A stretch of DNA of 64,000 bases from IMGVR_UViG_3300025161_000004:62001-126000; one strand, 5' to 3'; shown: positions 27,052-64,000, counted from the stretch's first letter. Notes: generated from the sequence alone by a model not told the origin. Made by a program: numbers and translations.

Positions 27052-27077
27052 TACTACTCCTTTATTTTATATTTTAT

Positions 27078-28501: not shown

Positions 28502-28604
28502 ATGATAATACTTTATTATAAATACTTTTTTTTATTATAATAATAAAAAAAGAAATTCTTTAGAATTCCTTAATCAAAACCATATTTAGTATTTTTTATT
28601 ATAA

Positions 28605-28919: not shown

Positions 28920-28952
28920 AATGTTATTTTTTTTATAAATACTTTAAAATTA

Positions 28953-30755: not shown

Positions 30756-30850
30756 GTGTTATATTTTTTTATAAAAAAATTTATTATGTAATTAATCTTA
30801 TTTATTATCACAAATAAATAGTTTTATTTTTTTTTAATATGTTAGTTAGA

Positions 30851-31873: not shown

Positions 31874-31888
31874 TTCTTATCTTATATA

Positions 31889-33928: not shown

Positions 33929-33929
33929 A

Positions 33930-40868: not shown

Positions 40869-40941
40869 TAGCGAGAGCAGGATTCGAACCTGCGATCTTG
40901 TGGTTATGAGCCACACTAGTTAACCGCTTCTCTATCTCGCA
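40869..40941 (-). tRNA. tRNA-Met (CAT), initiator-like, no encoded CCA
   Basis: Cloverleaf: acceptor TGCGAGA/TCTCGCT with 1:72 mismatch, anticodon arm TGTGG-CTCATAA-CCACA, T arm GCAGG-TTCGAAT-CCTGC; 3' end ACTA; weak D stem. Confidence 0.85.
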
Positions 40942-41104: not shown

Positions 41105-41240
41105 TGGGGGAGGCAGGATTCGAACCTGCTATACTTACTATTGGATTAGTAATATGACCCAATTACTGTAAATATAATCAGTTCTCCAAAAAAGGAGTAG
41201 TTTAAATTATATTTGAAAGTATTCGTTTTACTACTCCCCC
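41105..41240 (-). ncRNA. 136-nt tRNA-like RNA (unit C) whose anticodon arm is replaced by the permuted repeat motif
   Basis: Acceptor GGGGGAG/CTCCCCC-A; D-like arm AGTA/TACT; perfect T arm GCAGG-TTCGAAT-CCTGC; central arm AAATATAAT..CTCC-T6-GGAG-AACTG-ATTATATTT then ACAGTAA; extra hairpin TTACTA/TAGTAA. Confidence 0.75.
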
Positions 41241-48655: not shown

Positions 48656-48690
48656 CGTAATTTTTCTATAAATACTTACCCCATAAAAAC

Positions 48691-48714
48691 AAAAAGGGTC
48701 GAATTCGACCCTTT
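48691..48714 (-). terminator. Intrinsic terminator
   Basis: AAAGGGTCGAATTCGACCCTTTTT. Confidence 0.75.
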
Positions 48715-48734
48715 AATGCTATAAGGATTTCGGG

Positions 48735-50141: not shown

Positions 50142-50185
50142 TATTTACTGAGTTTTACTTTTCACTAGATTATTTATAGTATTAT

Positions 50186-50953
50186 TTATTCTATATGTGA
50201 GGTGGATTCTGTTATTGAATTAGACTTTTTTTCTGTACCTTCATAATAAAGAAAACTATCTCTAATCTCTTTGTCACTTAATTTTGGTAAGTTGTCAAAA
50301 TCTGCTATATATGTACCATCATCAAGTTTTATAATACCCTTTTCATTGTATTGATCTCTTCTCGCTTCAAACCAATTACCTTTCCACAGATCATTTAGAT
50401 TATAATAAAATGGATGTGAATCTTGTTTTCTCGACATTAATTTTTCTTGGTTGGTAGGTTCTCTTACTTCTTCAACTTCCTTATTTAGTTGTTGATATTT
50501 ATAATCTAAATTCTTGAATAAAGAATCAAGCTCTTTTACTTTTTCATTTAATTTTTTTATAATATCTAGCTGTAAAGCTAATAAATCAGTTTGTTTTTTA
50601 TCAATGTCGGTTGAATCAGATGGGATTAATGATTCTGATGACACCGATTGTGTGTCTACTGTTAGTGAATCACCAGTATTAATTGTATCCGTTGTATCTA
50701 ATGGTGTTTCAGTAGTACCTGTAGGAGTATTTTCAATATTAGACTCACTATCTTCACTTACAATCGAATCAAAAATATTCGTATTATTAGGTGTTTGAGG
50801 CTGTACACCACTATATATTGACTTTGAAAGAACGTCATTATCAACACTATTTAATTCATCAGATAAAATAGCTTTATAACTCGCCTCTTTAAGCGGATAT
50901 TTAGAGATATATCTGATCCTATCAATATGTTCCTGTAGGGTCTTACGACTCAT
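50186..50953 (-). CDS. Hypothetical acidic coiled-coil protein
   Basis: Likely start MSRKTLQE at 50953; low-complexity acidic middle; coiled coil; 'PT..EKL..R..DSHPF'. Confidence 0.7.
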   Translation of the reverse strand: MSRKTLQEHIDRIRYISKYPLKEASYKAILSDELNSVDNDVLSKSIYSGVQPQTPNNTNIFDSIVSEDSESNIENTPTGTTETPLDTTDTINTGDSLTVDTQSVSSESLIPSDSTDIDKKQTDLLALQLDIIKKLNEKVKELDSLFKNLDYKYQQLNKEVEEVREPTNQEKLMSRKQDSHPFYYNLNDLWKGNWFEARRDQYNEKGIIKLDDGTYIADFDNLPKLSDKEIRDSFLYYEGTEKKSNSITESTSHIE

Positions 50954-50964
50954 AATTATATAAA

Positions 50965-51144
50965 TCAATATTGCTCTCTTAATAATTGTTTTCCGTCTTC
51001 TGTAATAAATATTTTATCAATTCTTTCGATTAAACCCTCACGTTCTTTTATAATAACCTCTTTGTTATTTACCTTAGTCTTTTTAGGCTTTTTTTGGGAA
51101 TTATCACCCAAAAACTGATCTAATATGTTTTCTTTATTTTCCAT
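50965..51144 (-). CDS. Small hypothetical protein (59 aa, MENKENILDQFLG...EGLIERIDKIFITEDGKQLLREQY)
   Basis: Read by hand; fills the gap exactly; GTATTTATA motif at 51160-51169 just upstream; absent from the ORF track. Confidence 0.75.
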   Translation of the reverse strand: MENKENILDQFLGDNSQKKPKKTKVNNKEVIIKEREGLIERIDKIFITEDGKQLLREQY

Positions 51145-51175: not shown

Positions 51176-51823
51176 TTACTCATTTGATAAAAAAACAGGC
51201 ATGTATCGCTTTAAATTGTCAAAATTAGGTAATTTTTTATAGTAAAATTGATACTTCGAACCATCGACATCGTCAATATATTGGAATGATCTGTTTTGTA
51301 ATTCTGTTTTTATTTTTTCGATATCAAAATCAAAGTAATCATATATTCTTAAATCTATTCCCATAATTTTATTATCACAAAGAACATATGCCATATCATT
51401 TTTATAAATATAACTATAAACCCTTTTTAATGTTAATAAATCTCTAACATCAGTTTTTGGAAGCATGTTGATTAATTCCTCCACAGATTCAATGGCAAAA
51501 AATACTGGGTCTATATTAATATATGTGTATTTACTATTAAAATAAAATTTAGGTACTTGCTGTACAAATTCATCCACTTTACTAATGTGTCCATGCTTAT
51601 CTTCATTAAATGCGTATGCCCAATATAATGTGTTTGAAATTATTTTATTATCAAGAATGGATACATCATCAACGACCTTCTTTACTAATTTCCATCCAAC
51701 GATAAGAGTTGGTAATTTGAAACTCATATCAATATTGTCAATACCCTTAATATATTCGATATACTCAAGAGGTTCGTGATTAACTAATTCATCTGTATAA
51801 TATATTCTTGCTAATTTAATCAT
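51176..51823 (-). CDS. Hypothetical protein (215 aa)
   Basis: 'LPTLIVGW' motif; no function recognised. Confidence 0.7.
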   Translation of the reverse strand: MIKLARIYYTDELVNHEPLEYIEYIKGIDNIDMSFKLPTLIVGWKLVKKVVDDVSILDNKIISNTLYWAYAFNEDKHGHISKVDEFVQQVPKFYFNSKYTYINIDPVFFAIESVEELINMLPKTDVRDLLTLKRVYSYIYKNDMAYVLCDNKIMGIDLRIYDYFDFDIEKIKTELQNRSFQYIDDVDGSKYQFYYKKLPNFDNLKRYMPVFLSNE

Positions 51824-52076
51824 TTAAATCCGAATTTATATGTTTAAACAAATAATCAACACTCCTCTCAACTTCATTATATAATTCATTATGCTCTTTC
51901 TCGAACTTTCTATATATTCTATCATTTTCTAAATCTTCAATCGAATCTTTTTTTATATGTGTGTACATATAATAATTATAGGTTACATATCTCGCAATAT
52001 CATAAATTAATCGTTTATCACCACTAACCAACTTATTAATTGCATCTTGTAGTTCAGTAGGTGATTTAATAATCAT
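51816..52076 (-). CDS. Hypothetical protein (86 aa)
   Basis: Overlaps the next start by 8 nt. Confidence 0.6.
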   Translation of the reverse strand: MIIKSPTELQDAINKLVSGDKRLIYDIARYVTYNYYMYTHIKKDSIEDLENDRIYRKFEKEHNELYNEVERSVDYLFKHINSDLND

Positions 52077-52131: not shown

Positions 52132-53160
52132 TCAATCAATATATCTATTATAAAACAATCCCATAATCCTTTCCGCAGATTTACCGTCTCCATATGGTGA
52201 TTCTTGATTAACTACATAATCATTTATGTGTTCTTCAAAAACTAATTGAAGCAGACTTGGTTCTTTAACTAAGAAAGATGTATATCCAAGTGCTTCTGGT
52301 CTTTCTGTAGTTTTCCTACATACTAAGCACTTCTTGTTTAAGAAAGAACATTCTTCCTGAATCCCACCGCTATCAGTAATAACTAATTTACATTTAATTA
52401 ATAAATTAAGTAAATTTTCATGACTTAATGGTTCAACGACTTCAATTTTTTTTAATAAATACTTGTATTTTTGTACATTAGGATTAGGGTGAATAGGCAT
52501 TATAAACCTATAATAAGGATATTTTTCAGCTAAATTATTTAGTTCAGTAAACCATTGATCCATAATATCATGATTTTCACGTCTATGCATCGTGATTAAT
52601 ATAATATCGTCATATTCACATTTTTCTTTATACCCCAATAAACTATCTAATGCAGTATTACCAACAATATATGCATTTTTGGTTATATTTTCGCTTCTTA
52701 AATTATTTAATGATTCTAATGTCGGGCATAAGTGGATATCGGCAATCTCAGATATTAATCTTCTATTAACTTCCTCAGGAAAGGGATTTTCTTTATCATA
52801 TGTTCTTAATCCAGCTTCAAGATGAATAACTTTTACTTTATTATAAAATGCAGATAAAGCAGCAGCAACTGCCGATGTTGTATCACCTTGAACTAATACA
52901 TGTGTAAATGATTTATCATTTCTTAAAATATTTGATATACCATCCATAACAGATATATACACATTCGTCAATCTGTCATCGATAATAATATCTTTTATTT
53001 GTAAAAAATAATTAGCTAAAATTTTTTCATTTTTTAAAATTTCATGTTGACCTGTTGCGACAATTTTAAATTGAATTCTATTTTGTTTAGATAGAATATC
53101 TACTAACGATTTAATCTTAATCCATTCTGGTCTTGTCCCAAATACAATCAATAATTTCAT
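52132..53160 (-). CDS. wecB: UDP-N-acetylglucosamine 2-epimerase (non-hydrolysing)
   Basis: 'GTRPE.IK', 'TGQH', 'VQGDT', 'HLEAGLRT....PFPEE.NR', 'HRREN', 'TDSGGIQEE', 'TERPE', 'PYGDG'. Confidence 0.95.
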   Translation of the reverse strand: MKLLIVFGTRPEWIKIKSLVDILSKQNRIQFKIVATGQHEILKNEKILANYFLQIKDIIIDDRLTNVYISVMDGISNILRNDKSFTHVLVQGDTTSAVAAALSAFYNKVKVIHLEAGLRTYDKENPFPEEVNRRLISEIADIHLCPTLESLNNLRSENITKNAYIVGNTALDSLLGYKEKCEYDDIILITMHRRENHDIMDQWFTELNNLAEKYPYYRFIMPIHPNPNVQKYKYLLKKIEVVEPLSHENLLNLLIKCKLVITDSGGIQEECSFLNKKCLVCRKTTERPEALGYTSFLVKEPSLLQLVFEEHINDYVVNQESPYGDGKSAERIMGLFYNRYID

Positions 53161-53948
53161 ATCATATCACTAATTATTTCAGGTAAATCCCCATCAAATT
53201 TAATTGCTTTAGACCAAGCAGATGGGTTTACTAAATGTAAATTTACACTATCTTCATTCCATTTTAACCAAACATTATTATACCATTTTTCTTTATTAAA
53301 ATCATTAGTATGACCCCAAGTATTGATTTTTTGCAGTAATTCTTCGTTAGATAACACATATGACCCATGATAACAAATTGCTACTTCATTTGGAATTAAA
53401 ATACTGTTAATCGAATCAACACCATTATTCTTAAAAGGTCTTCTCTTTGATTGGAATCTAACACCGTTCTTTAAGTTAATACAAAATTCAGGATAACCTG
53501 TTATTTTATTGCCCGAAGAATCGAGCAAAATATAATTAAATGATTTCCAAAAACAATACCAACCAATCTTATAAAGGTCAAAATTAGGATGTTTTCTTAT
53601 AAAGTTTTTTATTTTTATCCATGATTCATTAAAATAAAATTCATCCGCATCATGAATTATTAAATAATCAATACCATCTGATAATGCTAAATCAACACAA
53701 GCATTTCTTTGATCTTCTTCTCTTGCCCAAACACCTTCAATAATTTTTATTTTATCAATGAACGCTGAATCCTTGATTTGTTTCAAATCAAAAGAATTTT
53801 TATATATCTTCTTAGCATTTGGATTATAATCCCAAGGTTTATCACTATATGCAACATAAATTATATCTACATGCGGATATGCATTTTCAATGTTTCGCAT
53901 AATCCATTTATCTTGACCAAACAATAATACATGTGTAGCTATTTTCAT
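53157..53948 (-). CDS. GT-A fold glycosyltransferase-like
   Basis: 'QRN...DYLIIHDADEF' DxD motif; 'H.SYV......KI..WGH'. Confidence 0.7.
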   Translation of the reverse strand: MKIATHVLLFGQDKWIMRNIENAYPHVDIIYVAYSDKPWDYNPNAKKIYKNSFDLKQIKDSAFIDKIKIIEGVWAREEDQRNACVDLALSDGIDYLIIHDADEFYFNESWIKIKNFIRKHPNFDLYKIGWYCFWKSFNYILLDSSGNKITGYPEFCINLKNGVRFQSKRRPFKNNGVDSINSILIPNEVAICYHGSYVLSNEELLQKINTWGHTNDFNKEKWYNNVWLKWNEDSVNLHLVNPSAWSKAIKFDGDLPEIISDMI

Positions 53949-54772
53949 AAATTACTATTATATGGTATCATTAATTTTCTATCAATTCCATAAGTAATAT
54001 TTTTATTTATCTCATTCATAACATTATGTTCACATATATATTCAGAAAATAAATTTTCAAATTCAACTAATTTGTCTATATGTACACATACATGATCTGA
54101 TGGATAATAATAATCAAGATAAAAAATATAATAATTCATTTTTCTTAAAAATGTCGCTAAATCAAAACAACTATTACCAGTTTTTCTCATCTGATTTTCC
54201 TCAAATTCAATGATTATTACTGGCTTATCTCTCTCTATTGTTCTTAATCCACCCATTAAAACATTTATTTCATATCCCTGAACATCAATCTTGATTAAAT
54301 CAATTTTCGGTAATTCATATGAATCTAACGGTCTTGAACGTATCCCGTCAATAGAGTTACTATCAACTATAGTAGGTGTAAAATTACCCATATTACATAT
54401 TTCTGATGATTTAATATATGGTAGTTTCACTTTACCATTCACATCTGAACACGCCTCATTATATATTATTACATTTTCAATTTTATTATGTTTTATATTA
54501 TTACTTAATAAAGTAAAATTCTGTATCTGCGGTTCAAAAGAATATATATAACCTTTATTCTTAACTATTTCAGAAAAAAATAATGTATGATACCCAAAAT
54601 TCGCACCAATATCAACAATATTATTTATATCATATTTTTCACTATATTTCTTTACAAATTCTAATATATGTGCTTCCCATTTTTTATTTTGCCCAATTGA
54701 ATTACTTGCCATAACATCATTCTCATAATATTCAATATAAAATTTTTGATGTTTTACTATTTTAGTTTTCAT
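53945..54772 (-). CDS. FkbM-family methyltransferase
   Basis: 'DIGANFGYHT', 'FEP', 'IKIDVQGYE..VL.G', 'PVIIIE'. Confidence 0.9.
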   Translation of the reverse strand: MKTKIVKHQKFYIEYYENDVMASNSIGQNKKWEAHILEFVKKYSEKYDINNIVDIGANFGYHTLFFSEIVKNKGYIYSFEPQIQNFTLLSNNIKHNKIENVIIYNEACSDVNGKVKLPYIKSSEICNMGNFTPTIVDSNSIDGIRSRPLDSYELPKIDLIKIDVQGYEINVLMGGLRTIERDKPVIIIEFEENQMRKTGNSCFDLATFLRKMNYYIFYLDYYYPSDHVCVHIDKLVEFENLFSEYICEHNVMNEINKNITYGIDRKLMIPYNSNL

Positions 54773-55725
54773 TAACTTAAAAAAATTTGTTTGAATTTAT
54801 TCATTACCTTTTCTGGTGTATAATTATGATAACAATTCCAAGAAATCTTTTTCTGTAAAAATTCTGGATTTATCAATAAATTTAATAATTCACTCTGACT
54901 ATTATAGTATATTCCATTATTACCGAGAATATCAAAATGTGCTTTATCGATAGCATTTCTACATGTTAATATTGGTTTATTTCTAGTTGAGAACTCACCA
55001 ATAGCCAATCCAAATGATTCACCCTTATGTCTTGCATGTATCATTGCATCACATGTATTTATGAATTTAACTTTCGTATATAAATCAGCAGTACCGTCTA
55101 AATATATGATATTTTTATATTTAGAATCACTAAATCTTTGAGTGTTCATAAATAAAAAATACAAATCAGGTTTTTTTATTGCTGCTTGTTTCACTGCTTC
55201 TTTAGCATAGGCAATATCAAACGTTTCATAGCCACCATATCTACCATAAACAATAGCATTATCTGGTATATTAAGTTCTTGACGCATATTATCATTATGT
55301 TCTGGTAAGTCTATCATATGTGGTACAAATGGATGACGATAACCATATAACCTACTCAACCATTCAGAAACATATGCATATACATTTCCGTGTGGTTCTT
55401 CATATTGGAAAACAGCATGTACTACTGTTTTATGTTTTTTTGAAATAACATCATCAATATAACCTGCCTTAAGAGTGTAAAATACGTCAGCCCGATAAGC
55501 ATCTAAGATTTCTTCTATTTGTTTTACATTATCATAAAAAATAACATCAAATCTATTTTTAAATTTTTCAATAGCTTTTTCATTAGAATATCTCCAAATA
55601 CTGGGATTCTTAGTTAGAATTATACTTTTATTGCCAAGTAATACTTCATTATGATGTGCATAATCATACATGGCAACCTCAGTACCTCTTAATGATAGTT
55701 GATTAGTGTGAAATACAATATTCAT
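54772..55725 (-). CDS. GT-B fold glycosyltransferase
   Basis: 'RGTEVAMYDYA', 'GRYGG', 'CDAMIHAR..GESFGLAIGE'. Confidence 0.8.
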   Translation of the reverse strand: MNIVFHTNQLSLRGTEVAMYDYAHHNEVLLGNKSIILTKNPSIWRYSNEKAIEKFKNRFDVIFYDNVKQIEEILDAYRADVFYTLKAGYIDDVISKKHKTVVHAVFQYEEPHGNVYAYVSEWLSRLYGYRHPFVPHMIDLPEHNDNMRQELNIPDNAIVYGRYGGYETFDIAYAKEAVKQAAIKKPDLYFLFMNTQRFSDSKYKNIIYLDGTADLYTKVKFINTCDAMIHARHKGESFGLAIGEFSTRNKPILTCRNAIDKAHFDILGNNGIYYNSQSELLNLLINPEFLQKKISWNCYHNYTPEKVMNKFKQIFLS

Positions 55726-56366
55726 TATTTTAATATTTTACATAAAATAAAATCACCACCATTATTCCATTTATCTTCTCTGATATGTTGTTCATATACT
55801 ATTTCGGTATTACATAACATTTTTAAATGTTCATAAAACGGATAATGAGATGCATCATCAATTAAAACAAAAGTACCATCTTTGAATCTATTAAAACAAT
55901 GAAGAAAAGCTAAACTTCTACCGTTACCATGAGGGCCATCCACAATAACTAAATCTATTGTTTCAGGTAACATACTTTCATTAATCTTATAGAATGTATT
56001 TTTTTGTCTTGTATGTGACGGAGTTAATTTATCTCTCATTTTAGATTCATCATATTTTTTATTAATAAACATACTTTCAAACGTATTATCGTCAGTATCA
56101 ACCAACGATATGATACTAAGAAGTAAGTTCTCATCGTGTCCTTTATATGCATATTCTATTGAATCATCAAAAGAGTAAATTTTAAAACGAGATGAATGTA
56201 TGGTATTAAAATCAATTAAAAACTCTGTCGATATTCCAGATCCAAACTCAACGATATTTAATTCTCTATCATTATTTTTTGATAAAAAATCATATAGTAA
56301 TTCAAATTCTTTTCTGGATAAACCCCAACCATCATTCTTATATTTTTCTAAATTCACCATATACAA
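55725..56366 (-). CDS. Class I SAM-dependent methyltransferase-like
   Basis: 'VEFGSGIST', 'DLVIVDGP..GR', 'LIDD'. Confidence 0.75.
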   Translation of the reverse strand: MYMVNLEKYKNDGWGLSRKEFELLYDFLSKNNDRELNIVEFGSGISTEFLIDFNTIHSSRFKIYSFDDSIEYAYKGHDENLLLSIISLVDTDDNTFESMFINKKYDESKMRDKLTPSHTRQKNTFYKINESMLPETIDLVIVDGPHGNGRSLAFLHCFNRFKDGTFVLIDDASHYPFYEHLKMLCNTEIVYEQHIREDKWNNGGDFILCKILK

Positions 56367-57076
56367 GTTTTATTTAATGTTTCTGCACCTTTAAGATAGT
56401 TTCTGGTCAATTTTAATCCTAACATTTTATCAAGTGTTGATCCAATATCAATATATGTATTTTTCTTATTAAATTTCCAAAACTCATATGTTATTATATT
56501 TGCAAGAGGACCTGCGGCAATTAAATATATGTAGTTATTCATATTATATTCACTAATATCCATCATCAATTTTTGGATTAACTGGCTACTGTTAACCCAT
56601 GCATCTATCCCTATTGGATAGAATTGTTCAACGTTAAATGGTAAATTTTCAGGTTTACTTTTATTATTTGCTATCAAAATTATTTTTTTCTCTTTTAATA
56701 CAGGAATTAATTCTGAAAGAAAATATTTATAATTCGAATTAACAAATATATTAGCCCAAGTTAAATTTTCTTCTGGTTGACCAGATAATTTTTTCATATA
56801 TTCAAATTTTTCTTTACCAACACAACATCGACACGCAATACCTATATAATAATTATCATCTACATACTTATATGAGTTTAACAAAATTTCACGCATCTTA
56901 ACATGTATTTGGCTTTTTGGGTCATACATAAATTCACCATCACCTTTATGTCTAATATCAATAAATTTATTCTCAAGAATCATTAATTCACCATCACCCC
57001 ATCTTGACAATGCAAAATGTTCATTATTTTTTAGTTTATTTAAAAAATGATCAAAATCGCCCTTAAACGTTTTCAT
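56354..57076 (-). CDS. GT-D fold (DUF1792-like) glycosyltransferase-like protein
   Basis: 'SRWGDGE', 'AAGPLA', 'IDIGS' motifs; likely start MKTFK at 57076. Confidence 0.55.
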   Translation of the reverse strand: MKTFKGDFDHFLNKLKNNEHFALSRWGDGELMILENKFIDIRHKGDGEFMYDPKSQIHVKMREILLNSYKYVDDNYYIGIACRCCVGKEKFEYMKKLSGQPEENLTWANIFVNSNYKYFLSELIPVLKEKKIILIANNKSKPENLPFNVEQFYPIGIDAWVNSSQLIQKLMMDISEYNMNNYIYLIAAGPLANIITYEFWKFNKKNTYIDIGSTLDKMLGLKLTRNYLKGAETLNKTCIW

Positions 57077-57077
57077 A

Positions 57078-57707
57078 TTATTTAACAAATTTCGATATTA
57101 TAAATCCACAATTACTTACGCTATCTTTTAATGGGGTTCTTTCAATAAATTTTGTTACTTTAGCATCTGCCCATGATCTAGCAATTTCACATTGGGGTGG
57201 TTTTACTGTGAAGTAATCATGACTCCATATAATAAAATCATTTTGTGCATTTTTCTCCATTAATTCAAGTTCTGTTTTCACATGATGATATTCATGATTA
57301 CCATCTTGAATAATGAAGTCAAAATCAAACGATTTACTTAAAAAATTCAATGAATTATCAATTACTCTCTTAAAATTTTTACTATGTAATTTATCATATT
57401 CTAATCGTTCCATTATATCAAGTAATGTCACTTCACCATAACCATTCATATCCACAGCTTGTAGTACATGATTAGTTGTACCTCTACCAAGGTAATTACC
57501 GATTTCAAGTATATGTCTAGGTTTAAGATATCGAATTATCACATATATAAATTTCCCTTCACTTTCCCATGCAGAACCACTCGGTTCTTCAGGATATCCA
57601 CTATACTTTGATTCATCATAATATTTAACAAAATCATCCAATGATATTCCAAATAGCTTATTAGTGGCATCAAAATAAGATTTAATAAAGTCTTGTTTTT
57701 TATCCAT
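57078..57707 (-). CDS. Class I SAM-dependent methyltransferase-like (Methyltransf_24-type)
   Basis: 'ILEIG...G', 'DFIIQDGNHEY..V..E', 'HD'; likely start MDKKQ at 57707. Confidence 0.7.
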   Translation of the reverse strand: MDKKQDFIKSYFDATNKLFGISLDDFVKYYDESKYSGYPEEPSGSAWESEGKFIYVIIRYLKPRHILEIGNYLGRGTTNHVLQAVDMNGYGEVTLLDIMERLEYDKLHSKNFKRVIDNSLNFLSKSFDFDFIIQDGNHEYHHVKTELELMEKNAQNDFIIWSHDYFTVKPPQCEIARSWADAKVTKFIERTPLKDSVSNCGFIISKFVK

Positions 57708-57723
57708 AATTTTATTATTTATT

Positions 57724-58386
57724 TTAATCAACCCATCCTCTATTACCAGCATTTTTATGAGTATATCCCATTAATTCTGATAATGTTATATTATAATTAT
57801 AATCAGTATGTATATATTTTTTTTCTAATACATTTAATTTTTTATCATTTATAACACTATATAAAAATACTTCTGGTGATATTGAATTTCTAATATCTCT
57901 ATGAATATTATTTTCATCATTAAAAAGTTTTAAATTACCAAAAACCTCTTCAGCACCATTTTTAGAAATAAAAAACACTTCCATCAAATAATAATTATCA
58001 CCGTATAATGTTGTTGGTAATGGCTTACGACATATAGCATCATATTTTTTGTTAATAATTAAATTTATATTGTCATAAAATACTTTTTTTGCATTTTCAG
58101 TGTTAACTAAAGAGACATCATCATGAGAAAAAATAATAACATCTGGATTATATTTTATTGATGCTTGCATTGTAGTGATACAGCCATTAACGCAGCCTAT
58201 TTTATGTGATATTCCTTCAAACTTTATATATTCAATATTACTAAACTGTTTTAACGTTTCTTTTGGGTTCTGATTATTATATCCGATAATAGAATATGAA
58301 TCAGGAAATAATTCTTTTTCTATTTTCACCGTATTGTAGAGTGTATTAAATCTATTATAAACATTATGTGCGAATACTATTCTCAT
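57724..58386 (-). CDS. GT-A-like glycosyltransferase
   Basis: 'HNVYNR' N-terminus, 'IIFSHDD'; cluster context. Confidence 0.5.
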   Translation of the reverse strand: MRIVFAHNVYNRFNTLYNTVKIEKELFPDSYSIIGYNNQNPKETLKQFSNIEYIKFEGISHKIGCVNGCITTMQASIKYNPDVIIFSHDDVSLVNTENAKKVFYDNINLIINKKYDAICRKPLPTTLYGDNYYLMEVFFISKNGAEEVFGNLKLFNDENNIHRDIRNSISPEVFLYSVINDKKLNVLEKKYIHTDYNYNITLSELMGYTHKNAGNRGWVD

Positions 58387-58387
58387 G

Positions 58388-59113
58388 TTAATTATTAACT
58401 ATTTTCCAACCTCTTTTAATACATTCAATTACAATTGAATCTCTTAATGGGATATGAGATTTCATCAACCATGATGCATTTTTATCACTACCAACAGTTC
58501 GACCATACTCAGGAACACAACTCCAAATATTTCTGTTATTTTCTGGATGAGGAGGAACATATGTGTTTATATTAGCATATTTTTGTAATAAATATGAAAA
58601 CATGATATCTTCTCCATTATCCCACGATACTGGTTGTTCATACCATAAATATTTTGCCCATTCCTGCTTAAAAAACCAACAATGACCGACTAAATCTACT
58701 CTTTCAATGTTATTACTATGTATACCATTCCAACCAAATTTTACATGTCCACTATATGATTTACTACTATTAAGTAATACACCACTTGCACCGTATAATC
58801 CTTCATTCTTTTCAATACACTCCACACAATTTTTAAACCAATCTTTATATGGTAGAATATCATCATCAAATATTGCAACATATTTTGTTTTACATAACAA
58901 TGAAATTGTAAATCTTCCATAAAATTTGGTATTCCAATTACATTGATAAGTTTTTATTTTTTTATCTGTTGGAAGTTGTTGTGGAACATCACCATTATTA
59001 TACCATACATGAATATTTTCACTCAAAACGGGTATTGATTGATTTTTTATTGCTTGAATCTGTTGCTCAAGTTTATCTGGTCTTTTATATACATTTAAAA
59101 TTACGCTAATCAT
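58388..59113 (-). CDS. GT2-like glycosyltransferase
   Basis: 'ISVILNVYKRP', 'IFDDD', 'GEDI'. Confidence 0.75.
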   Translation of the reverse strand: MISVILNVYKRPDKLEQQIQAIKNQSIPVLSENIHVWYNNGDVPQQLPTDKKIKTYQCNWNTKFYGRFTISLLCKTKYVAIFDDDILPYKDWFKNCVECIEKNEGLYGASGVLLNSSKSYSGHVKFGWNGIHSNNIERVDLVGHCWFFKQEWAKYLWYEQPVSWDNGEDIMFSYLLQKYANINTYVPPHPENNRNIWSCVPEYGRTVGSDKNASWLMKSHIPLRDSIVIECIKRGWKIVNN

Positions 59114-59114
59114 A

Positions 59115-60164
59115 TTAATCGAAAGTTATATCACTTAAATCTCTATCCGTATCATATTTATTCTCACCATCAATAAATTTTTTTGTGTAAGATTTTTTTG
59201 TTTTTCTTGCAATCTCATTAAGTTTTGAATCAAAATTACCATCGTGCCAAACCAATGAATTAGGCATTCTATATACTTTCACACCAAAGGTTTTAATATG
59301 TTGAACTATTGTATCCCAAAAAAACGTACTGGTATATGTTGCAATTTTTTTTATTCCTATATCAACATAGTGATCAAAAAATTTTAAAAATCTATTATCG
59401 AATAATGTTCCACCATCAATAGCAATTGATTGACCATCATACCACCAATCAGGTTGAGGTTTGTCCTTTAAATACCCATATATGTGATAACTAAATACCA
59501 TATATGAATTATCCATTTCTTTCACTCTGAAAAACTCATCCATTAAAATATTCAAAAAATTATCACATAAAATAAAATCATCATCAATCTGTAAAAACCC
59601 ATGACACTTATACTGTTTACCAACACTCCAAAGTTTATTTACTGTTTTCCAATAATTTTTTTTTCCACCATTAATATCATTTTTTAAATAAATAATATCT
59701 GGAAATTCGATTTGTAAATTATCATATCTAATATCATTAGAGCCGTCATTAATTAAACAAAATTTAAACGTATACTTAGTTTTTTGAGTAAAAAGTTGTT
59801 TTAATATTCTTCTAATTTTATTATATCTATTGTATGATGCAACACAAATTACTACATCGTAATCTACATCTTTTTCTTTTACGTAATATCCATAATCTCT
59901 TAACGTTACAGGTACATCAGATACAATGTTTACTTTTGCCGTATTTTGTTTATTAGAAGCTAAATTTCCAATTCTCTGACTTAATCTAGGATGTGTATTT
60001 TGTCTTATTTTATCTTCAATTTTAACTGATTTTGGTGGTTCATTTCTCATCTTTTTTTCAAAATAATTATCGACATGTGTTTTGCCTATAATGATTTTCT
60101 TTTTATCATTAGTTAATTCGATCTTACGTTTTATCACCCTCTTAATATCCAGTTTTTTTGCCAT
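59115..60164 (-). CDS. GT2-like glycosyltransferase with basic N-terminal extension
   Basis: 'SYNR', 'INDGS', 'QIDDD', 'SLVWH'. Confidence 0.75.
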   Translation of the reverse strand: MAKKLDIKRVIKRKIELTNDKKKIIIGKTHVDNYFEKKMRNEPPKSVKIEDKIRQNTHPRLSQRIGNLASNKQNTAKVNIVSDVPVTLRDYGYYVKEKDVDYDVVICVASYNRYNKIRRILKQLFTQKTKYTFKFCLINDGSNDIRYDNLQIEFPDIIYLKNDINGGKKNYWKTVNKLWSVGKQYKCHGFLQIDDDFILCDNFLNILMDEFFRVKEMDNSYMVFSYHIYGYLKDKPQPDWWYDGQSIAIDGGTLFDNRFLKFFDHYVDIGIKKIATYTSTFFWDTIVQHIKTFGVKVYRMPNSLVWHDGNFDSKLNEIARKTKKSYTKKFIDGENKYDTDRDLSDITFD

Positions 60165-60805
60165 TATAATCCTAAATTATGTTTTCTAATTATAGTAAGA
60201 ATAGCATCCTTCTCACTATTTGTGTTTGAGGTGATTCCTTCATCTAAATAGTAAGCAAAAAAGAATACATCAGGTAAAAAAATACCCTCAATACCATTTC
60301 TTAACATAGTTAAAAAAATGTCCCAATCCTGAAGGCGTTTTAGATTTTCATCAAACATTGGAAATACATCTCGTCTAATCAATGACATCGTAGAAATATA
60401 GTTTCCTTGCTTTAATCGATTACCATTAAATGGCATTGAGGGTATGCAAAAATTACCTTTCATCGGATGAGTATCTGGATGTAACACAATCCCATAATAT
60501 CCACAATAAGCATAACCCTTATCTTGATTATTTTTTAATTTATTCAACATTAAAGACAACATATTTTTAGGCATAACAATATCATCATCACAAAAAAATA
60601 CAAATGGTTGTGTGGATTTTTTAAATCCATCATTTCTTTTTTTTGGTGCACTACCTTCATTATCATTTATAATAATTTCTTTAGGGTTATTTGCTTCTAT
60701 CATAGGTAATACAAATTCATCAAAAAATTTTCTTCTTTTAGGTGATAGTGGAACTATTACTGAAATAGGTAATCCATCTTCTACTTTATCAATGAAAATA
60801 GCCAT
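60164..60805 (-). CDS. GT2-family glycosyltransferase
   Basis: 'ISVIVP', 'RNDG', 'FCDDD', 'FDENLKRLQDWD'. Confidence 0.8.
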   Translation of the reverse strand: MAIFIDKVEDGLPISVIVPLSPKRRKFFDEFVLPMIEANNPKEIIINDNEGSAPKKRNDGFKKSTQPFVFFCDDDIVMPKNMLSLMLNKLKNNQDKGYAYCGYYGIVLHPDTHPMKGNFCIPSMPFNGNRLKQGNYISTMSLIRRDVFPMFDENLKRLQDWDIFLTMLRNGIEGIFLPDVFFFAYYLDEGITSNTNSEKDAILTIIRKHNLGL

Positions 60806-61216
60806 CTATAATTCTATGTTAATATTTACACAATTATTATTTTCTATCAAATAAATAATATCATCAGGTATCGTATTATTTTCTATAATAAAATAATTTG
60901 GCACTATCCTTATTACTAAACTCTGATAATATTTATCAGACAAATTATTTGTAACAAAATCAATTAACTTAGGACTAACCAACACATTTACATCATATCG
61001 TATTACTTCACCATCAATACTTTTAATTGATAGTCCTTGTTCTTTTAATGTTATACTTGATAATTCATTTAATGCATTTATTATTGTAGATAAAAATAAA
61101 TAATCATTATCATCATCTTCTATAAAATTATTAAAAAATATACTACTAAACTTCTGTTTACATTTTAAAGTTTTATGGAGAACAAAATCATCAATATCAA
61201 TCTTTTCTTCTATCAT
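60806..61216 (-). CDS. Hypothetical protein (136 aa)
   Basis: ORF abutting the GT2 gene. Confidence 0.6.
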   Translation of the reverse strand: MIEEKIDIDDFVLHKTLKCKQKFSSIFFNNFIEDDDNDYLFLSTIINALNELSSITLKEQGLSIKSIDGEVIRYDVNVLVSPKLIDFVTNNLSDKYYQSLVIRIVPNYFIIENNTIPDDIIYLIENNNCVNINIEL

Positions 61217-61440
61217 TACAATATCTTATTACAAAATTTCATATTTACCTTACTCTTATTTCTAAATTTAAATTTTAAGTAATATATTTTTTTCTATTAA
61301 TAAAAAAATATTATTATTTCAGTTACTACCAATTTCATTATCGACGATTAAAAATTATATATGTTAAACATCAATAATTCCAATAATTAGTCCCACTTTC
61401 CATTTTAATTTAATAATATTTAAAATAATATATTTATCAT

Positions 61441-62157
61441 TTATATTTTTACAGGTAATTCATCAGCATATTGTGTTACAAATTGTTGTCTATTTTGTTC
61501 CCACTGTTGATTGGTTATGCCAATAGAATGGTGCGTTATTCTTATATCAGTAATAACACCAATATTACACCCATCAAGATAATTAGGAAAACAAAATGAT
61601 AAATCATAAAAATGAAATCCTCTATAGGTTTCATCAAATGGGTGTTCAATATCTTCAGGGTCTACTGCCATGAATAACCCATCGATTACAACTACTGGTT
61701 TTACTCCAAAATGTGGATTACTGTATTTACTTTCCCACTTACGAACACCATTATCATGATTTACTATTCCAATCATTTTAGAAAAATTCATATTTTTACC
61801 TGTTGCATCTAACCACCAACAACCATGAGAATTTAACTCGGTTGTACCTGCAACACCAATAATTTGGTAATTATTGTTTCGTCTATTAAAATGGTTTAAT
61901 AAAATTTTACCCCAATCTTTAGTATCAAACTCAATATCATTATGGCAGAACACAAAAACAGCATCTTTCTTATCTAATTCATTTAGGGCTTTGTTATAAA
62001 CTTCAGTTAATGAATATTGGTTATAGTTTTCATATGGGTGAATACTGAATTCAAAACTATTAGATATACCAATGGTTTTATATATGTGATCATTGAACTT
62101 ATTATTAAATGCTTGTCCAAGATGAGAGCTATAAATCACACGGATTATGGATTTCAT
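61441..62157 (-). CDS. Glycosyltransferase-like (GT-A) protein
   Basis: 'YN.A....VFCHNDI', 'IIGVAG', 'IDGLFMA', 'FHFYDL', 'H.S.G'. Confidence 0.75.
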   Translation of the reverse strand: MKSIIRVIYSSHLGQAFNNKFNDHIYKTIGISNSFEFSIHPYENYNQYSLTEVYNKALNELDKKDAVFVFCHNDIEFDTKDWGKILLNHFNRRNNNYQIIGVAGTTELNSHGCWWLDATGKNMNFSKMIGIVNHDNGVRKWESKYSNPHFGVKPVVVIDGLFMAVDPEDIEHPFDETYRGFHFYDLSFCFPNYLDGCNIGVITDIRITHHSIGITNQQWEQNRQQFVTQYADELPVKI

Positions 62158-62199: not shown

Positions 62200-62514
62200 T
62201 TATTGATTTCTTATTTTTTGTAGACCGCTCTCATATACTGATTTAACTCTTTCCAATGGAAAGGGAATACGTATTAAAGTACCATCAGGGATATCAAATT
62301 CAGATAAATATTCAGGATTCGCAAATAGTATAAAAAAATCATAAAATGGATCATTATAATATTTTTGTGATAATTTATCCATTCTACTTCTACCTTCATT
62401 CCAAATTTCATATTTATCTGTACTGGCTATTGGTATCTTTACAAATGGTAATTGATCTATATCACCATTTTCATTAATGAAAATCTCGTATCTATTATAT
62501 GTATTTCTTATCAT
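62200..62514 (-). CDS. Baseplate gp53 / LysM-like tail protein
   Basis: 'RMDKLSQKYYNDP....IL.ANP......IPDG..IRIP'. Confidence 0.75.
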   Translation of the reverse strand: MIRNTYNRYEIFINENGDIDQLPFVKIPIASTDKYEIWNEGRSRMDKLSQKYYNDPFYDFFILFANPEYLSEFDIPDGTLIRIPFPLERVKSVYESGLQKIRNQ

Positions 62515-62526: not shown

Positions 62527-63999
62527 TTAAAAACTAATATTTTTAGGATCATCAGTTCCATACTGTAAATCCTCATATTTTTTAGGTAATGCGTAAACAC
62601 CTTTATCATAATATGTAGAATTTGCATAATAGTTAAATCCTATAGCATTTTGAAGTGCATCGATAGGTCCTCTTAATGACTGACCACCTATTACCTTCAT
62701 AGACATTGAAATATCACAAATCATATACTGCATTCCCATTCCCTCAGGATTCGTATCCCAAGGTGCATCACTATAGTTAAAATTAATACTTTCTATAATT
62801 ACTTTAGTATGAAAAAAGTCACCAATACGTAATATACATACTGGTTGACGACCAAATACAGAATTCTTACTACTTAATTGTTCACCATTAGAACTTATCA
62901 TTCTCATGGCTGCGCCTTGGCGTACACATTGCTGTAAAAATGTTAATCTTTTATGAAAATCTTCTGGTGTTTGAGAATAAAAAACTGGTACAAATTTATT
63001 TTCACGTATATAATTAAACCCCCTAACTTTACCATCTTCAATTGTAAATGGATTAAATATACAATTTGATGGGTAGTTTTGTTCTGCTTTTATTCTAGAT
63101 ATTTCCTTATCCAAAGAATCTTTTGCTTCGATTAAATTATCAATTTCTTCTTGATTTATATTCGTTTGATTTTCGATAGTTTGTTGTTCTGTAACACCTT
63201 TGTTTCTAAATATAATTCTCACATATCTCGATTTTTTTGATTCAGGAAGATTTATACTGTCAGCAGATCTTGTACTTTCAGGTGCTAAAATACTACTATT
63301 AGGTACAATCGTAACAGTAGCACCTAGTTCTTCCATAGTTTTACCATTATTAGCTTCTTTGAATTTTTGTTCAAAGAAATTTTTTACAGCAATAGCTCTT
63401 CTTTCACTTAACTCTTTGTTATAATCAAATTCTTTTGATCTATCAATATACAACTTTGATGCATTACCTTCAAATATAATTTCAAGTGAAGCAATAGTAT
63501 CATCATCCTTTATGGATTGAATTCTATTATTAATTAATTCAACAAAATTACTATTCAAATTATCATTATTAGTGGCATATATATTTGTTGATTGATTACC
63601 TGTCTCATAATTAGCATCAATAATATCATTTTGTATTGTGGTATTTAGATTTGCATCTATTTTAGGTATGTCATTTGGGAAAAATATATTTATATCACTA
63701 TAATTAAAATCCTTATAATTTCTAATTACAGTTTTTTCTCTTAAAGTTTCAATTTGTTTAACTATATCATCTCTCTTTTTTACTTTATCTGATAAATTAT
63801 ATGTTTCTTTAGGTGTAGCTTCACCACCAAAAGCAAAAAAATCTGCAAATTCTTTATTTGTTGTAAATCCTTTTATTTGGGGTGGATAATCTATAATTAA
63901 CTTAAATGATAGAGTTGCAGATCTTTCAGAAAAACCATAAGTATACATTGGTTCATTTCTACCAATGAAATTTACTTGTTCCCACTTAGCAGTTGCTTG
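62527..63999 (-). CDS. Partial (starts beyond right edge) baseplate/tube-initiator-like protein with an inserted OmpA-like domain
   Basis: Frame is open upstream of 63948 ('W.QVNFIGRNEPMYTY...ER'); OmpA-like 'G.AS......N.ELSERRA.AV....R.V'; C-terminal 'P.CILRIGDFFHTK.II.S....Y...PWD.NPEG.G'. Confidence 0.7.
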   Translation of the reverse strand, partial: QATAKWEQVNFIGRNEPMYTYGFSERSATLSFKLIIDYPPQIKGFTTNKEFADFFAFGGEATPKETYNLSDKVKKRDDIVKQIETLREKTVIRNYKDFNYSDINIFFPNDIPKIDANLNTTIQNDIIDANYETGNQSTNIYATNNDNLNSNFVELINNRIQSIKDDDTIASLEIIFEGNASKLYIDRSKEFDYNKELSERRAIAVKNFFEQKFKEANNGKTMEELGATVTIVPNSSILAPESTRSADSINLPESKKSRYVRIIFRNKGVTEQQTIENQTNINQEEIDNLIEAKDSLDKEISRIKAEQNYPSNCIFNPFTIEDGKVRGFNYIRENKFVPVFYSQTPEDFHKRLTFLQQCVRQGAAMRMISSNGEQLSSKNSVFGRQPVCILRIGDFFHTKVIIESINFNYSDAPWDTNPEGMGMQYMICDISMSMKVIGGQSLRGPIDALQNAIGFNYYANSTYYDKGVYALPKKYEDLQYGTDDPKNISF

Positions 64000-64000
64000 T

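What the first reader, a model, noticed from the sequence alone, without database searches (positions are those of the whole stretch)
52132..62157. 10-kb glycan-building island: about 8 glycosyltransferase-like genes of three folds, 3 methyltransferases and WecB
A tightly coupled run of GT-A, GT-B and GT-D-like enzymes, SAM methyltransferases and UDP-GlcNAc 2-epimerase lies next to baseplate genes, and one more GT is at 3577..4974. No flippase, polymerase or other membrane protein is present, which argues against a host-type O-antigen or capsule locus. Inference: cytoplasmic synthesis of a methylated ManNAc-containing glycan on virion proteins (the fibres are very Ser/Thr-rich) or on DNA.
Basis: partly seen in the sequence, partly recalled or inferred. 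Interest (0 to 1): 0.6.

Follow-up and report, generated by a model that had tools for sequence, protein, structure and literature searches.

The report
Jumbo-phage sugar-chain (glycan) gene island
An uncultivated jumbo phage carries, next to its baseplate genes, a 10-kb block of soluble enzymes (eight glycosyltransferase-like proteins, three methyltransferases and a UDP-ManNAc-forming epimerase) that should build a methylated sugar chain. Related phages hold other sugar genes at the same spot, but what the chain is attached to remains unproven.

Summary
Window 52132-62157 holds 13 tightly packed minus-strand genes:
- WecB, the non-hydrolysing UDP-GlcNAc 2-epimerase, scoring above the NCBIfam equivalog cut-off.
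- Three SAM methyltransferases (one FkbM, two Methyltransf_24).
- Eight glycosyltransferase-like proteins of three folds: six GT-A, one GT-D-like with a DXE motif, and one compact GT4-like GT-B with an EX7E motif.
- One 136-aa protein of unknown function.

None of the 13 has a membrane helix. The held genome (247 kb, about 79% complete, T4-like capsid, no Shine-Dalgarno use) has no phosphoglycosyl transferase, flippase-like protein or thymidylate-synthase homologue.

The island is not a one-off. At least nine related jumbo-phage contigs carry the same cassette between the same baseplate and core genes. A wider lineage of at least 191 IMG/VR contigs keeps a glycan slot there, with variable sugar chemistry.

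Multi-glycosyltransferase clusters of this kind are already described in jumbo phages and are usually read as host-surface modification. No experiment exists for either reading. I rank virion-protein glycosylation first (about 0.4), host envelope glycan remodelling second (about 0.33) and DNA glycosylation low (about 0.08). Verdict: a real, well-defined new member of a known kind, with the acceptor unresolved.

The parts
62527..64000 (-). 3' part of a 988-aa baseplate-module protein. The ORF runs off the window to position 65490. A promoter-like motif lies 83 nt upstream of its start.
   Evidence: ORF continues in L177; 43-63% identical homologues flank the island in L011 and L097-L105; motif
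62200..62514 (-). 104-aa baseplate wedge subunit-like protein, immediately upstream of the island
   Evidence: phrog_7145 E 9e-7; 57-88% identical in relatives at the same position
61441..62157 (-). GT-A glycosyltransferase (Glyco_tranf_2_5), first gene of the island
   Evidence: PF13712 E 5e-23, 82 bits; 50-84% identical in relatives
60806..61216 (-). 136-aa protein of unknown function
   Evidence: No Pfam or PHROG hit; a homologue was found only in L001 (49% identity)
60164..60805 (-). GT2-family glycosyltransferase (213 aa)
   Evidence: PF00535 E 4e-8; phrog_14775
59115..60164 (-). GT2-family glycosyltransferase (349 aa) with about 100 aa of N-terminal extension
   Evidence: PF00535 E 3e-6, residues 106-170
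58388..59113 (-). GT2-family glycosyltransferase. It belongs to a GT2-WecB-GT-D-like triad that other T4-like phages also carry.
   Evidence: PF00535 E 7e-6; TIGR04440 weak; triad in L002-L004
57724..58386 (-). GT-A-fold protein, a probable glycosyltransferase, with an invariant H-D-D motif
   Evidence: Alignment A2; AF2 pLDDT 91.7; Foldseek PDB hits to nucleotide-diphospho-sugar transferases. A sugar nucleotidyltransferase of the same fold is not excluded.
57078..57752 (-). Class I SAM methyltransferase (Methyltransf_24, TylF-related)
   Evidence: PF13578 E 1e-8
56354..57088 (-). GT-D-like glycosyltransferase (DUF1792 relative) with a conserved D-x-E motif
   Evidence: PF22882 28.7 bits against a cut-off of 27; SP_1767-family hit, weak; invariant D32-G33-E34; best PDB profile hit is GT-D GalT1 4phr, E 0.08
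55725..56366 (-). Class I SAM methyltransferase (Methyltransf_24)
   Evidence: PF13578 E 1.5e-6
54772..55725 (-). Compact GT-B (GT4-like, probably retaining) glycosyltransferase from a very large family that has no Pfam model
   Evidence: 3806 homologues; invariant E236/E244; AF2 pLDDT 93.8; Foldseek GT4 hits at E 1e-11
53945..54772 (-). FkbM-family SAM methyltransferase
   Evidence: PF05050 E 1e-21; TIGR01444
53157..53948 (-). Probable GT2-like (GT-A) glycosyltransferase
   Evidence: Nearest ESM Atlas clusters are GT2 (TM 0.91); PF00535 13.6 bits; invariant D-A-D-E; hhalign to a GT2 profile not significant
52132..53160 (-). WecB/MnaA-type non-hydrolysing UDP-GlcNAc 2-epimerase, which makes UDP-ManNAc
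   Evidence: PF02350 E 4e-74; TIGR00236 268 bits against 210; aligns end to end with solved epimerases at E 9e-60
51176..52076 (-). Two unknown genes (86 aa and 215 aa) that close the apparent transcription unit. The 215-aa protein is core to the lineage.
   Evidence: 215-aa homologue in 32 of 32 related loci; the next promoter-like motif is at 51168
47243..50968 (-). Three unknown genes (260, 468 and 470 aa). The 260-aa and 470-aa proteins are core lineage markers.
   Evidence: no family; at least 191 contigs carry the 470-aa protein; the 260-aa protein is in 32 of 32 loci
3577..4974 (-). Possible additional GT-B glycosyltransferase (weak evidence)
   Evidence: Glyco_transf_4 and Glyco_trans_1_4 hits at E 0.005-0.009, below cut-off; GlgM E 0.19

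Best explanation
The island is a phage-encoded, membrane-independent glycan assembly line.

Proposed mechanism:
- WecB converts host UDP-GlcNAc into UDP-ManNAc.
- Up to eight soluble glycosyltransferases (GT-A, GT-D-like, GT4-like GT-B) add ManNAc and host-supplied nucleotide sugars stepwise to an acceptor in the cytoplasm.
- Three SAM methyltransferases O-methylate the sugars.

The island appears to be transcribed as one unit with the baseplate genes upstream. The most likely acceptor is one or more phage-encoded virion surface proteins, such as decoration, fibre or baseplate-associated proteins. The released particle would then carry a lineage-specific methylated glycan coat, as in glycosylated mycobacteriophages and the fibrils of giant viruses.

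What is shown: the enzyme inventory, the solubility of the products, the conserved position, and the variability of the tailoring genes.
What is inferred: the donors, the order of steps, co-transcription, and above all the acceptor.
For: - Enzyme identities.
- No TM segment in any island product.
- The held genome has no ORF with more than 5 TM-like segments, no PF02397 or PF00953 initiating transferase and no other nucleotide-sugar enzyme.
- The same cassette lies between the same baseplate genes and the same downstream core genes in L001, L011, L097-L099, L103, L104/L105 and L009/L010. The glycosyltransferases are 45-80% identical, as conserved as the flanking structural proteins at 38-63%. 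This suggests an acceptor that is inherited with the phage.
- In the wider lineage (at least 191 contigs) the slot upstream of the 215-aa core gene always holds glycan genes, of varying chemistry. WecB is present in 15 of 32 loci. Elsewhere the slot holds NAD-dependent epimerase/dehydratases, DegT, PfkB, GT2 and methyltransferases.
- A promoter-like motif (GTATTTAT, 12-fold enriched, 20-35 nt before about 50 starts) precedes the 988-aa baseplate gene. It is not seen again at a promoter-like position until after the 215-aa gene; one further copy lies inside the WecB coding sequence (52462). Relatives show the same placement.
- Ser/Thr-rich proteins with head-decoration or fibre-like domains lie in the same strand block.
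- Precedents: mycobacteriophage virion glycosylation (cited in PMC12619734) and clade-specific glycan clusters of giant viruses (PMC10117803).
Against: - No glycan, glycoprotein or transcript has been observed. No RNA run holds the sequence.
- The promoter-like motif also precedes a replication operon (23165), so expression timing cannot be inferred.
- On its downstream side the island borders SSB-like, UvsX-like, exonuclease and DnaB-like genes.
- No enzyme could be identified as a protein-modifying initiating transferase.
- The S/T-rich linker of the neighbouring 260-aa protein is not conserved in the lineage.
- The published interpretation of comparable clusters is modification of host surface polysaccharide.
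- UDP-ManNAc is classically used on undecaprenyl-linked acceptors (established knowledge).
Confidence: 0.4

Rival explanations
1. Host envelope remodelling. The soluble phage glycosyltransferases and methyltransferases act at the inner face of the membrane on host undecaprenyl-(pyro)phosphate-linked intermediates. They use the host's initiating transferase, flippase and ligase or O-oligosaccharyltransferase. The surface polysaccharide or general O-glycan of the infected cell is thereby altered, for example to block superinfection or to stop progeny re-adsorbing to debris.
For: - This is the published reading of multi-glycosyltransferase clusters in jumbo cyanophages such as P-SSM2 and S-SCSM2R (PMC7824862; PMC12801897).
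- O-antigen and capsule glycosyltransferases are typically soluble or peripheral, so the absence of TM helices does not exclude it.
- UDP-ManNAc is a typical donor for undecaprenyl-linked glycans (established knowledge).
- Variable content of the slot among relatives resembles O-antigen locus diversity.
- The GT4-like family also occurs in bacterial glycosyltransferase clusters, for example in Wenyingzhuangia and Sporomusa.
- The missing Shine-Dalgarno signal suggests a Bacteroidota host. From memory, O-glycans of that phylum contain methylated sugars and ManNAc derivatives. That is a lead, not a test.
Against: - The cassette is a fixed-position feature of the lineage, with glycosyltransferases as conserved as the structural genes, across phages from sediment, hot-spring, digester and freshwater samples. 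Accessory genes adapted to particular hosts would not be expected to look like this.
- It appears to be co-transcribed with baseplate genes.
- The phage supplies no initiating or export function.
Confidence: 0.33
2. DNA hypermodification. The glycosyltransferases build a methylated oligosaccharide on a modified base of the phage DNA to protect it from host nucleases.
For: - Phage DNA can carry oligosaccharides built by several glycosyltransferases; arabinosylated 5-hydroxycytosine is one example (PMC13326640). Pyle et al. 2024 is cited for this.
- The island adjoins replication and recombination genes on one side.
- All the enzymes are cytoplasmic.
Against: - The held genome has no thymidylate-synthase-family enzyme (PF00303) to make 5-hmC, 5-hmU or 5-hoC, and no TGT/DpdA. 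The genome is only about 79% complete, so this is not final.
- Eight glycosyltransferases and three methyltransferases exceed any described DNA glycan (my reading).
- GT-D-like and FkbM or TylF-type enzymes are known from protein- and sugar-directed pathways (established knowledge).
Confidence: 0.08
3. A free or otherwise attached cytoplasmic product. Examples are a polymethylated oligosaccharide or a glycosylated small molecule, with a role in host takeover rather than as a coat.
For: The pathway is soluble and has no export genes. It is rich in methyltransferases. Iyer et al. consider secondary-metabolite-like products for some cyanophage sugar clusters.
Against: There is no aglycone or scaffold biosynthesis gene in or beside the island. 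No precedent exists in phages. The position beside baseplate genes would be unexplained.
Confidence: 0.07

Closest known systems
Sugar and glycosyltransferase gene clusters of jumbo phages ('capsular polysaccharide modification systems': P-SSM2, S-SCSM1, S-SCSM2R; Iyer et al. 2021, PMC7824862; PMC12801897)
   Same: Large T4-like phage. Many paralogous glycosyltransferases from several families sit with sugar-tailoring enzymes in one cluster. Content varies between related phages. No experimental function is known.
   Different: This cassette has WecB as its only nucleotide-sugar enzyme and carries a GT-D-like enzyme and three methyltransferases. It sits at a fixed site between baseplate and core genes, apparently in the baseplate transcription unit. 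The phage lacks psbA, its host is probably not a cyanobacterium, and its close relatives are all uncultivated.
Mycobacteriophage virion glycosylation (Freeman et al. 2023, as cited in PMC12619734)
   Same: Phage-encoded glycosyltransferases could decorate capsid or tail proteins in the cytoplasm without membrane machinery.
   Different: Those phages carry about two glycosyltransferases (PMC11256854), and their glycans were shown by experiment. Here there are eight glycosyltransferase-like genes plus methyltransferases and an epimerase, and nothing has been shown. No sequence relationship was tested.
Clade-specific glycosylation clusters of giant viruses (Megavirinae fibrils, chlorovirus capsid glycans; PMC10117803, PMC9614988)
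   Same: An autonomous, virus-encoded pathway with bacterial-type sugars, methylation and clade-specific cluster content. Homologues of the GT4-like protein occur in giant-virus MAGs.
   Different: Those are eukaryotic viruses with much larger clusters and chemically determined glycans. No orthology of whole clusters was found.
'Moraphages', aquatic jumbo phages of Bacteroidota with four core glycosyltransferase orthogroups (PMC12619734)
   Same: Genome size of 200-307 kb against an estimated 310 kb here. Environmental origin. Bacteroidota-like translation signals. Glycosyltransferases among the conserved genes.
   Different: The DnaK and DnaJ genes reported for all moraphages are absent from the held 247 kb, as is glutamine synthetase, which the paper also lists for moraphages. 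Membership is not shown.
Phage DNA glycosylation systems (T4 glucosyl-hmC; RB69 and DLP3 arabinosyl-5hoC; PMC13326640)
   Same: Several soluble phage glycosyltransferases use UDP-sugars in a T4-like phage.
   Different: Those systems need a thymidylate-synthase homologue that makes the hydroxylated base. None is found here.

Membership tests
Non-hydrolysing UDP-GlcNAc 2-epimerase (WecB/MnaA, TIGR00236) | Whole-protein score above the curated equivalog cut-off, and clearly better than the hydrolysing NeuC model | tested here: met
   TIGR00236 268.5 bits against a cut-off of 210; NeuC model 62 bits against a cut-off of 236
Non-hydrolysing UDP-GlcNAc 2-epimerase (WecB/MnaA, TIGR00236) | Conserved active-site motifs over the full length of solved enzymes | tested here: met
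   End-to-end alignment with 6vlb (E 9e-60). The GDT, EAGLRT, PEE-NRR, HRREN and DSGGIQEE blocks are conserved.
Non-hydrolysing UDP-GlcNAc 2-epimerase (WecB/MnaA, TIGR00236) | Epimerase activity on UDP-GlcNAc | not testable with these tools
   Needs an enzyme assay
GT4-like retaining GT-B glycosyltransferases | Two-Rossmann-domain GT-B fold | tested here: met
   AF2 pLDDT 93.8; Foldseek hits to BshA, MshA, PimA and WaaG at E about 1e-11 and TM about 0.7
GT4-like retaining GT-B glycosyltransferases | EX7E motif in the C-terminal domain | tested here: met
   E236 and E244 are invariant in 25 homologues
GT4-like retaining GT-B glycosyltransferases | Match to the Pfam Glycos_transf_1 model | tested here: not met
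   No Pfam hit. The PDB profile search found nothing. The family is a divergent, unmodelled branch.
GT-D fold glycosyltransferases (DUF1792) | Match to the GT-D or GT-D-like model above cut-off | tested here: met
   PF22882 28.7 bits against 27, which is marginal; PF08759 is below cut-off
GT-D fold glycosyltransferases (DUF1792) | Metal-binding D-x-E motif | tested here: met
   D32-G33-E34 invariant in 13 homologues. The only PDB profile match covers this segment of GalT1 4phr (E 0.08).
GT-D fold glycosyltransferases (DUF1792) | GT-D three-dimensional fold | not tested
Self-sufficient Wzx/Wzy- or ABC-dependent O-antigen or capsule locus | Initiating phosphoglycosyl transferase (WecA/MraY or WbaP type) | tested here: not met
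   No PF00953 or PF02397 match in the held genome
Self-sufficient Wzx/Wzy- or ABC-dependent O-antigen or capsule locus | Flippase, polymerase or transporter (polytopic membrane proteins) | tested here: not met
   No TM-like segment in the island. No ORF in the genome has more than 5 TM-like segments; this is a crude hydropathy scan on a genome about 79% complete.
Phage DNA glycosylation system | Thymidylate-synthase-family enzyme that makes 5-hmC, 5-hmU or 5-hoC as the glycosyl acceptor | tested here: not met
   No PF00303 match in the held 247 kb. About 21% of the genome is missing.
Phage virion glycosylation system | Phage-encoded glycosyltransferases linked to structural genes | tested here: met
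   The island follows the baseplate genes on the same strand with no promoter-like motif between them
Phage virion glycosylation system | Glycan covalently bound to virion proteins | not testable with these tools
   Needs particles and mass spectrometry
Jumbo-phage sugar and glycosyltransferase clusters (Iyer et al. 2021) | Several glycosyltransferase families plus sugar-tailoring enzymes in one cluster, polymorphic among relatives | tested here: met
Jumbo-phage sugar and glycosyltransferase clusters (Iyer et al. 2021) | NAD-dependent epimerase/dehydratase paralogues, PfkB kinase and nucleotidyltransferase | tested here: not met
   PF01370 and PF00483 absent from this genome; PfkB was not searched for in it. 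NAD-dependent epimerase/dehydratases and PfkB are present in the same slot of relatives.
Moraphages (PMC12619734) | DnaK/DnaJ heat-shock genes, reported in all members | tested here: not met
   No PF00012 or PF00226 match; the genome is incomplete

The most novel reading that the evidence does not exclude
A large, uncultivated lineage of 250-370-kb jumbo phages, probably infecting Bacteroidota, builds its own methylated glycan coat on virion proteins in the bacterial cytoplasm. The glycan contains ManNAc in this member. It is made from a hypervariable 'glycan slot' co-transcribed with the baseplate genes. That would be a bacteriophage counterpart of the autonomous, clade-specific glycosylation of giant viruses. 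One component is a widespread GT4-like family with no Pfam model, shared by phages, giant viruses and bacteria.
Probability: 0.35. Interest if true: 0.7.

Novelty: new member of a known kind. Interest (0 to 1): 0.45.

Why it matters
Multi-glycosyltransferase clusters are common in large environmental phages, yet none has an experimentally known product or acceptor. This cassette is a clean case for study:
- It is compact, with all products soluble.
- It has a single dedicated donor enzyme, WecB.
- It keeps its position across many genomes.
- Natural variants swap the tailoring enzymes (methyl, sulfo, deoxy and amino sugars).

If the glycan decorates virions, phage glycosylation would extend beyond actinobacteriophages. 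It would also suggest a general way for phage particles to vary their surface, affecting adsorption, stability, and evasion of predators or defences. If the glycan instead rewrites the host surface, this would be a conserved superinfection-exclusion device in lytic jumbo phages. Either result would also assign a function to a GT4-like family with thousands of unannotated members.

Tried and rejected
- **Close relatives in the GenBank phage collection.** None were found by DNA search or with the 470-aa or Glyco_tranf_2_5 proteins. The WecB hits there are distant or come from host DNA.
- **T4 late promoter TATAAATA.** It is not enriched: 115 occurrences found against about 130 expected. The sigma-70 and terminator scans were no better than shuffles.
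- **The 260-aa neighbour (50186-50968) as a mucin-like acceptor.** Its S/T-rich linker (44% S+T over 50 aa) is peculiar to this genome. The median across 42 homologues is 16%. Rejected as a clue for the lineage.
- **Sequence searches of the unassigned ORFs against PDB.** Nothing was found.
- **Profile-profile comparison of the 53157 and 57724 families with a GT2 profile.** Only the DXD regions aligned, at probability 3-15%. Inconclusive.
- **Methyltransferase specificity from PDB.** Only non-significant hits to O-methyltransferases and MycE.
- **Moraphage membership.** DnaK, DnaJ and glutamine synthetase are absent.
- **Cyanophage identity.** No psbA.
- **Expression.** No RNA run holds the sequence. 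Laying contigs of four DNA runs on 52132-58100 showed the same phage at low depth in hot-spring and soil samples, and no credible structural variant.
- **The 224-nt gap at 61217-61440.** No Rfam family and no unusual folding, z = 0.07.
- **Bacterial contexts of the GT4-like family.** These are glycosyltransferase clusters or isolated genes and do not reveal the acceptor. Two look-ups failed because I gave inexact ORF ends.
- **Not used.** Complex prediction was not run, because no specific enzyme-acceptor pair could be justified. No genetic code other than table 11 was needed.

Full report
**Source and setting.** The window is positions 62001-126000 of a single 246,768-bp IMG/VR virus record. 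The record is linear, and CheckV puts it at about 79% complete. GC content is 28.5%. It encodes a T4-like major head protein (phrog_138) and has no psbA. Only 3% of genes have a Shine-Dalgarno-like core upstream, below the 5% random background, and the region before start codons is A-rich. That pattern is typical of Bacteroidota and their phages, so the host assignment is an inference. Nearly identical DNA occurs in sediment, hot-spring and soil metagenomes from different studies. No RNA run holds it.

**The observation.** Thirteen minus-strand ORFs fill 52132-62157. Their starts and stops overlap or abut, apart from two gaps of 224 nt and 42 nt.

Assignments from Pfam and NCBIfam:
- WecB, above the equivalog cut-off of the non-hydrolysing epimerase. 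All catalytic-region blocks align with solved enzymes.
- One FkbM and two Methyltransf_24 methyltransferases.
- Four GT-A enzymes: Glyco_tranf_2_5 and three GT2.
- One marginal GT-D-like protein. Its homologues keep an invariant D-G-E, the GT-D metal motif.

Three further ORFs had no family hit:
- 54772-55725 is a compact GT-B. The AF2 model has pLDDT 93.8, and Foldseek places it among GT4 enzymes (BshA, MshA, PimA, WaaG) at E about 1e-11. E236 and E244 (EX7E) are invariant.
- 57724-58386 has a GT-A fold (pLDDT 91.7, TM about 0.5 to SpsA and ColGalT1) with an invariant H-D-D. A nucleotidyltransferase of the same fold cannot be excluded.
- 53157-53948 is GT2-like only by its ESM Atlas neighbours and a 13.6-bit PF00535 hit.

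The 136-aa ORF at 60806-61216 remains unknown. The ninth GT, at 3577-4974, is weak.

**Membrane and export functions.** No island product has a TM-like segment. In the whole record no ORF has more than five such segments. There is no WecA/MraY-type or WbaP-type initiating transferase. WecB is the only nucleotide-sugar enzyme: the record has no NAD-dependent epimerase/dehydratase and no sugar nucleotidyltransferase. All donors other than UDP-ManNAc must therefore come from the host.

**Neighbourhood.**
- Upstream in transcription order lie a baseplate hub, an 855-aa protein with five hydrophobic segments (possibly the tape measure), a 988-aa protein that runs off the window end, and a 104-aa baseplate-wedge-like protein.
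- Downstream lie five unknown genes, and then SSB-like, UvsX-like, exonuclease and DnaB-like genes.

The island thus sits at the border between the baseplate and replication modules, not inside a purely structural block.

**Comparative evidence.** The same cassette lies between the same flanking genes in L001 (178 kb), L011 (371 kb), L097, L098, L099 (363 kb), L103 and L104/L105 (327 kb); the short contigs L009/L010 carry the cassette with the downstream core genes. The glycosyltransferases are 45-80% identical and the flanking proteins 38-63%.

The tailoring genes differ between relatives:
- L001 replaces the middle of the island with an FkbM methyltransferase, an NAD-dependent epimerase/dehydratase, a Methyltransf_23 and a TylF O-methyltransferase.
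- L011 adds methyltransferases and a sulfotransferase.

Using the conserved 470-aa downstream protein as a marker, at least 191 IMG/VR contigs belong to the wider lineage. Of 32 loci with at least 9 kb upstream, all keep the 215-aa and 260-aa core genes and 15 keep WecB. In twelve WecB-less loci the slot still holds sugar genes. Among 55 ORFs there, 15 match NAD-dependent epimerase/dehydratase families. Others match Polysacc_synt_2, DegT aminotransferases, PfkB kinases, GT2 and several methyltransferases, with occasional TnpB and homing-endonuclease genes.

The lineage therefore has a fixed glycan slot with changing chemistry. A smaller GT2-WecB-GT-D-like triad also occurs in unrelated T4-like phages, next to their capsid module.

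**The GT4-like family.** This family is notable in its own right. It has 3806 homologues at E of 1e-3 or better, and the 120 best listed are 49-83% identical. It has no Pfam model. It is present in at least 566 viral contigs, including giant-virus MAGs, and in 128 bacterial species genomes of many phyla. Its neighbours elsewhere are again glycan genes: NAD-dependent epimerases, FkbM, GT25, GT10, GT2 and GT17.

**Transcription.** The 8-mer GTATTTAT, usually within AGTATTTATAAAAAAA, is 12-fold enriched upstream of genes and lies 20-35 nt before about 50 start codons.
- Around the island it occurs before the 988-aa baseplate gene (65573), after the 215-aa gene (51168) and before the 470-aa gene (48675).
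- On the coding strand between 53161 and 62157 it is absent. One copy lies inside WecB (52462).
- Relatives show the same placement at orthologous sites.

This suggests one transcription unit running from the baseplate genes through the island. The same motif also precedes a helicase and DNA-polymerase operon (23165), so it gives no information on timing.

**Acceptor.**
- *DNA.* All described glycosylated bases start from a thymidylate-synthase homologue (PMC13326640). None is present here, nor is TGT/DpdA. A fifth of the genome is missing, however.
- *Host envelope.* This is the published inference for similar clusters (PMC7824862; PMC12801897). Soluble enzymes are compatible with it, because the host could supply initiation and export.
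- *Virion proteins.* This reading is favoured by the fixed position, by conservation equal to that of the structural genes across phages from different habitats, by the apparent co-transcription with baseplate genes, and by the presence of Ser/Thr-rich proteins that match head-decoration, tail-fibre and virion-structural PHROG families. Precedents exist in mycobacteriophages and giant viruses.

None of this is direct evidence. I rank virion glycosylation at about 0.4, host-envelope remodelling at about 0.33, DNA at about 0.08 and another cytoplasmic product at about 0.07.

**Known or new.** Multi-glycosyltransferase sugar clusters in jumbo phages have been described before (Iyer et al. 2021, PMC7824862; PMC12801897; the 'moraphage' paper notes four core glycosyltransferase orthogroups). 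The kind is therefore known, and this is a new member of it. Membership in the moraphages is not supported by their heat-shock markers.

What this analysis adds:
- the complete enzyme inventory;
- the lineage-wide fixed slot;
- the candidate shared transcription unit with the baseplate genes;
- the large unmodelled GT4-like family.

Noticed in passing
Genome-wide; in or near the window at 48675, 51168, 28134, 28525, 28942, 23165, 15735, 13122, 6272 and 5009 (minus strand): A promoter-like motif, GTATTTAT (often AGTATTTATAAAAAAA), is 12-fold enriched upstream of genes. It lies 20-35 nt before about 50 start codons and is conserved at orthologous intergenic sites in relatives. It precedes both structural and replication operons.
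   Followed up: partly
window 54772-55725 and loci L017-L176: The GT4-like protein belongs to a very large family with no Pfam model. It has 3806 homologues, in at least 566 viral contigs including giant-virus MAGs and in 128 bacterial species. The 120 best homologues listed are 49-83% identical to the query.
   Followed up: partly
window 24045-34931: Seven consecutive Ser/Thr-rich proteins (20-25% S+T against a genome mean of 11.7%). Two of them (25192-27051 and 31889-33928) share a domain that matches head-decoration, virion-structural and tail-fibre PHROGs.
   Followed up: partly
window 40869-40941 and 41105-41240 (minus strand): Two tRNA genes by Rfam. The second match spans 136 nt, which suggests an insertion or intron.
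   Followed up: no
window 62527-64000 and L177: The ORF listed as 473 aa in fact continues past the window end to position 65490, giving 988 aa. Upstream of it lies an 855-aa protein with five hydrophobic segments, possibly the tape measure, and then a baseplate hub.
   Followed up: partly
window 9285-12284 and 19830-22667: Two unusual fusions. A 999-aa protein carries a tRNA nucleotidyltransferase domain. A 945-aa helicase has a C-terminal region that matches anaerobic ribonucleotide reductase PHROGs.
   Followed up: no
runs X1-X8 against window 52132-62100: Essentially identical sequence occurs at low depth in sediment, hot-spring and soil metagenomes from separate studies. That is a wide range of habitats for a single phage genotype.
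   Followed up: partly
loci L189-L247 (the glycan slot in relatives): The slot occasionally contains TnpB/IS605 (OrfB_IS605, Cas12f1-like TNB) and GIY-YIG/NUMOD3 homing-endonuclease genes. Mobile elements may help exchange cassettes.
   Followed up: no
G000:C1:135207-135602 (plus strand, outside the window): A further GT2-family gene (277-aa ORF, 36.7 bits) lies elsewhere in the genome.
   Followed up: no
L009/L010 and several 'bacterial' MAG contigs (for example L042, which is the same contig as IMG/VR locus L137): Contigs binned as Dojkabacteria or Crocinitomicaceae carry the phage cassette or phage-like contexts. They are probably phage contigs mis-binned into MAGs.
   Followed up: no
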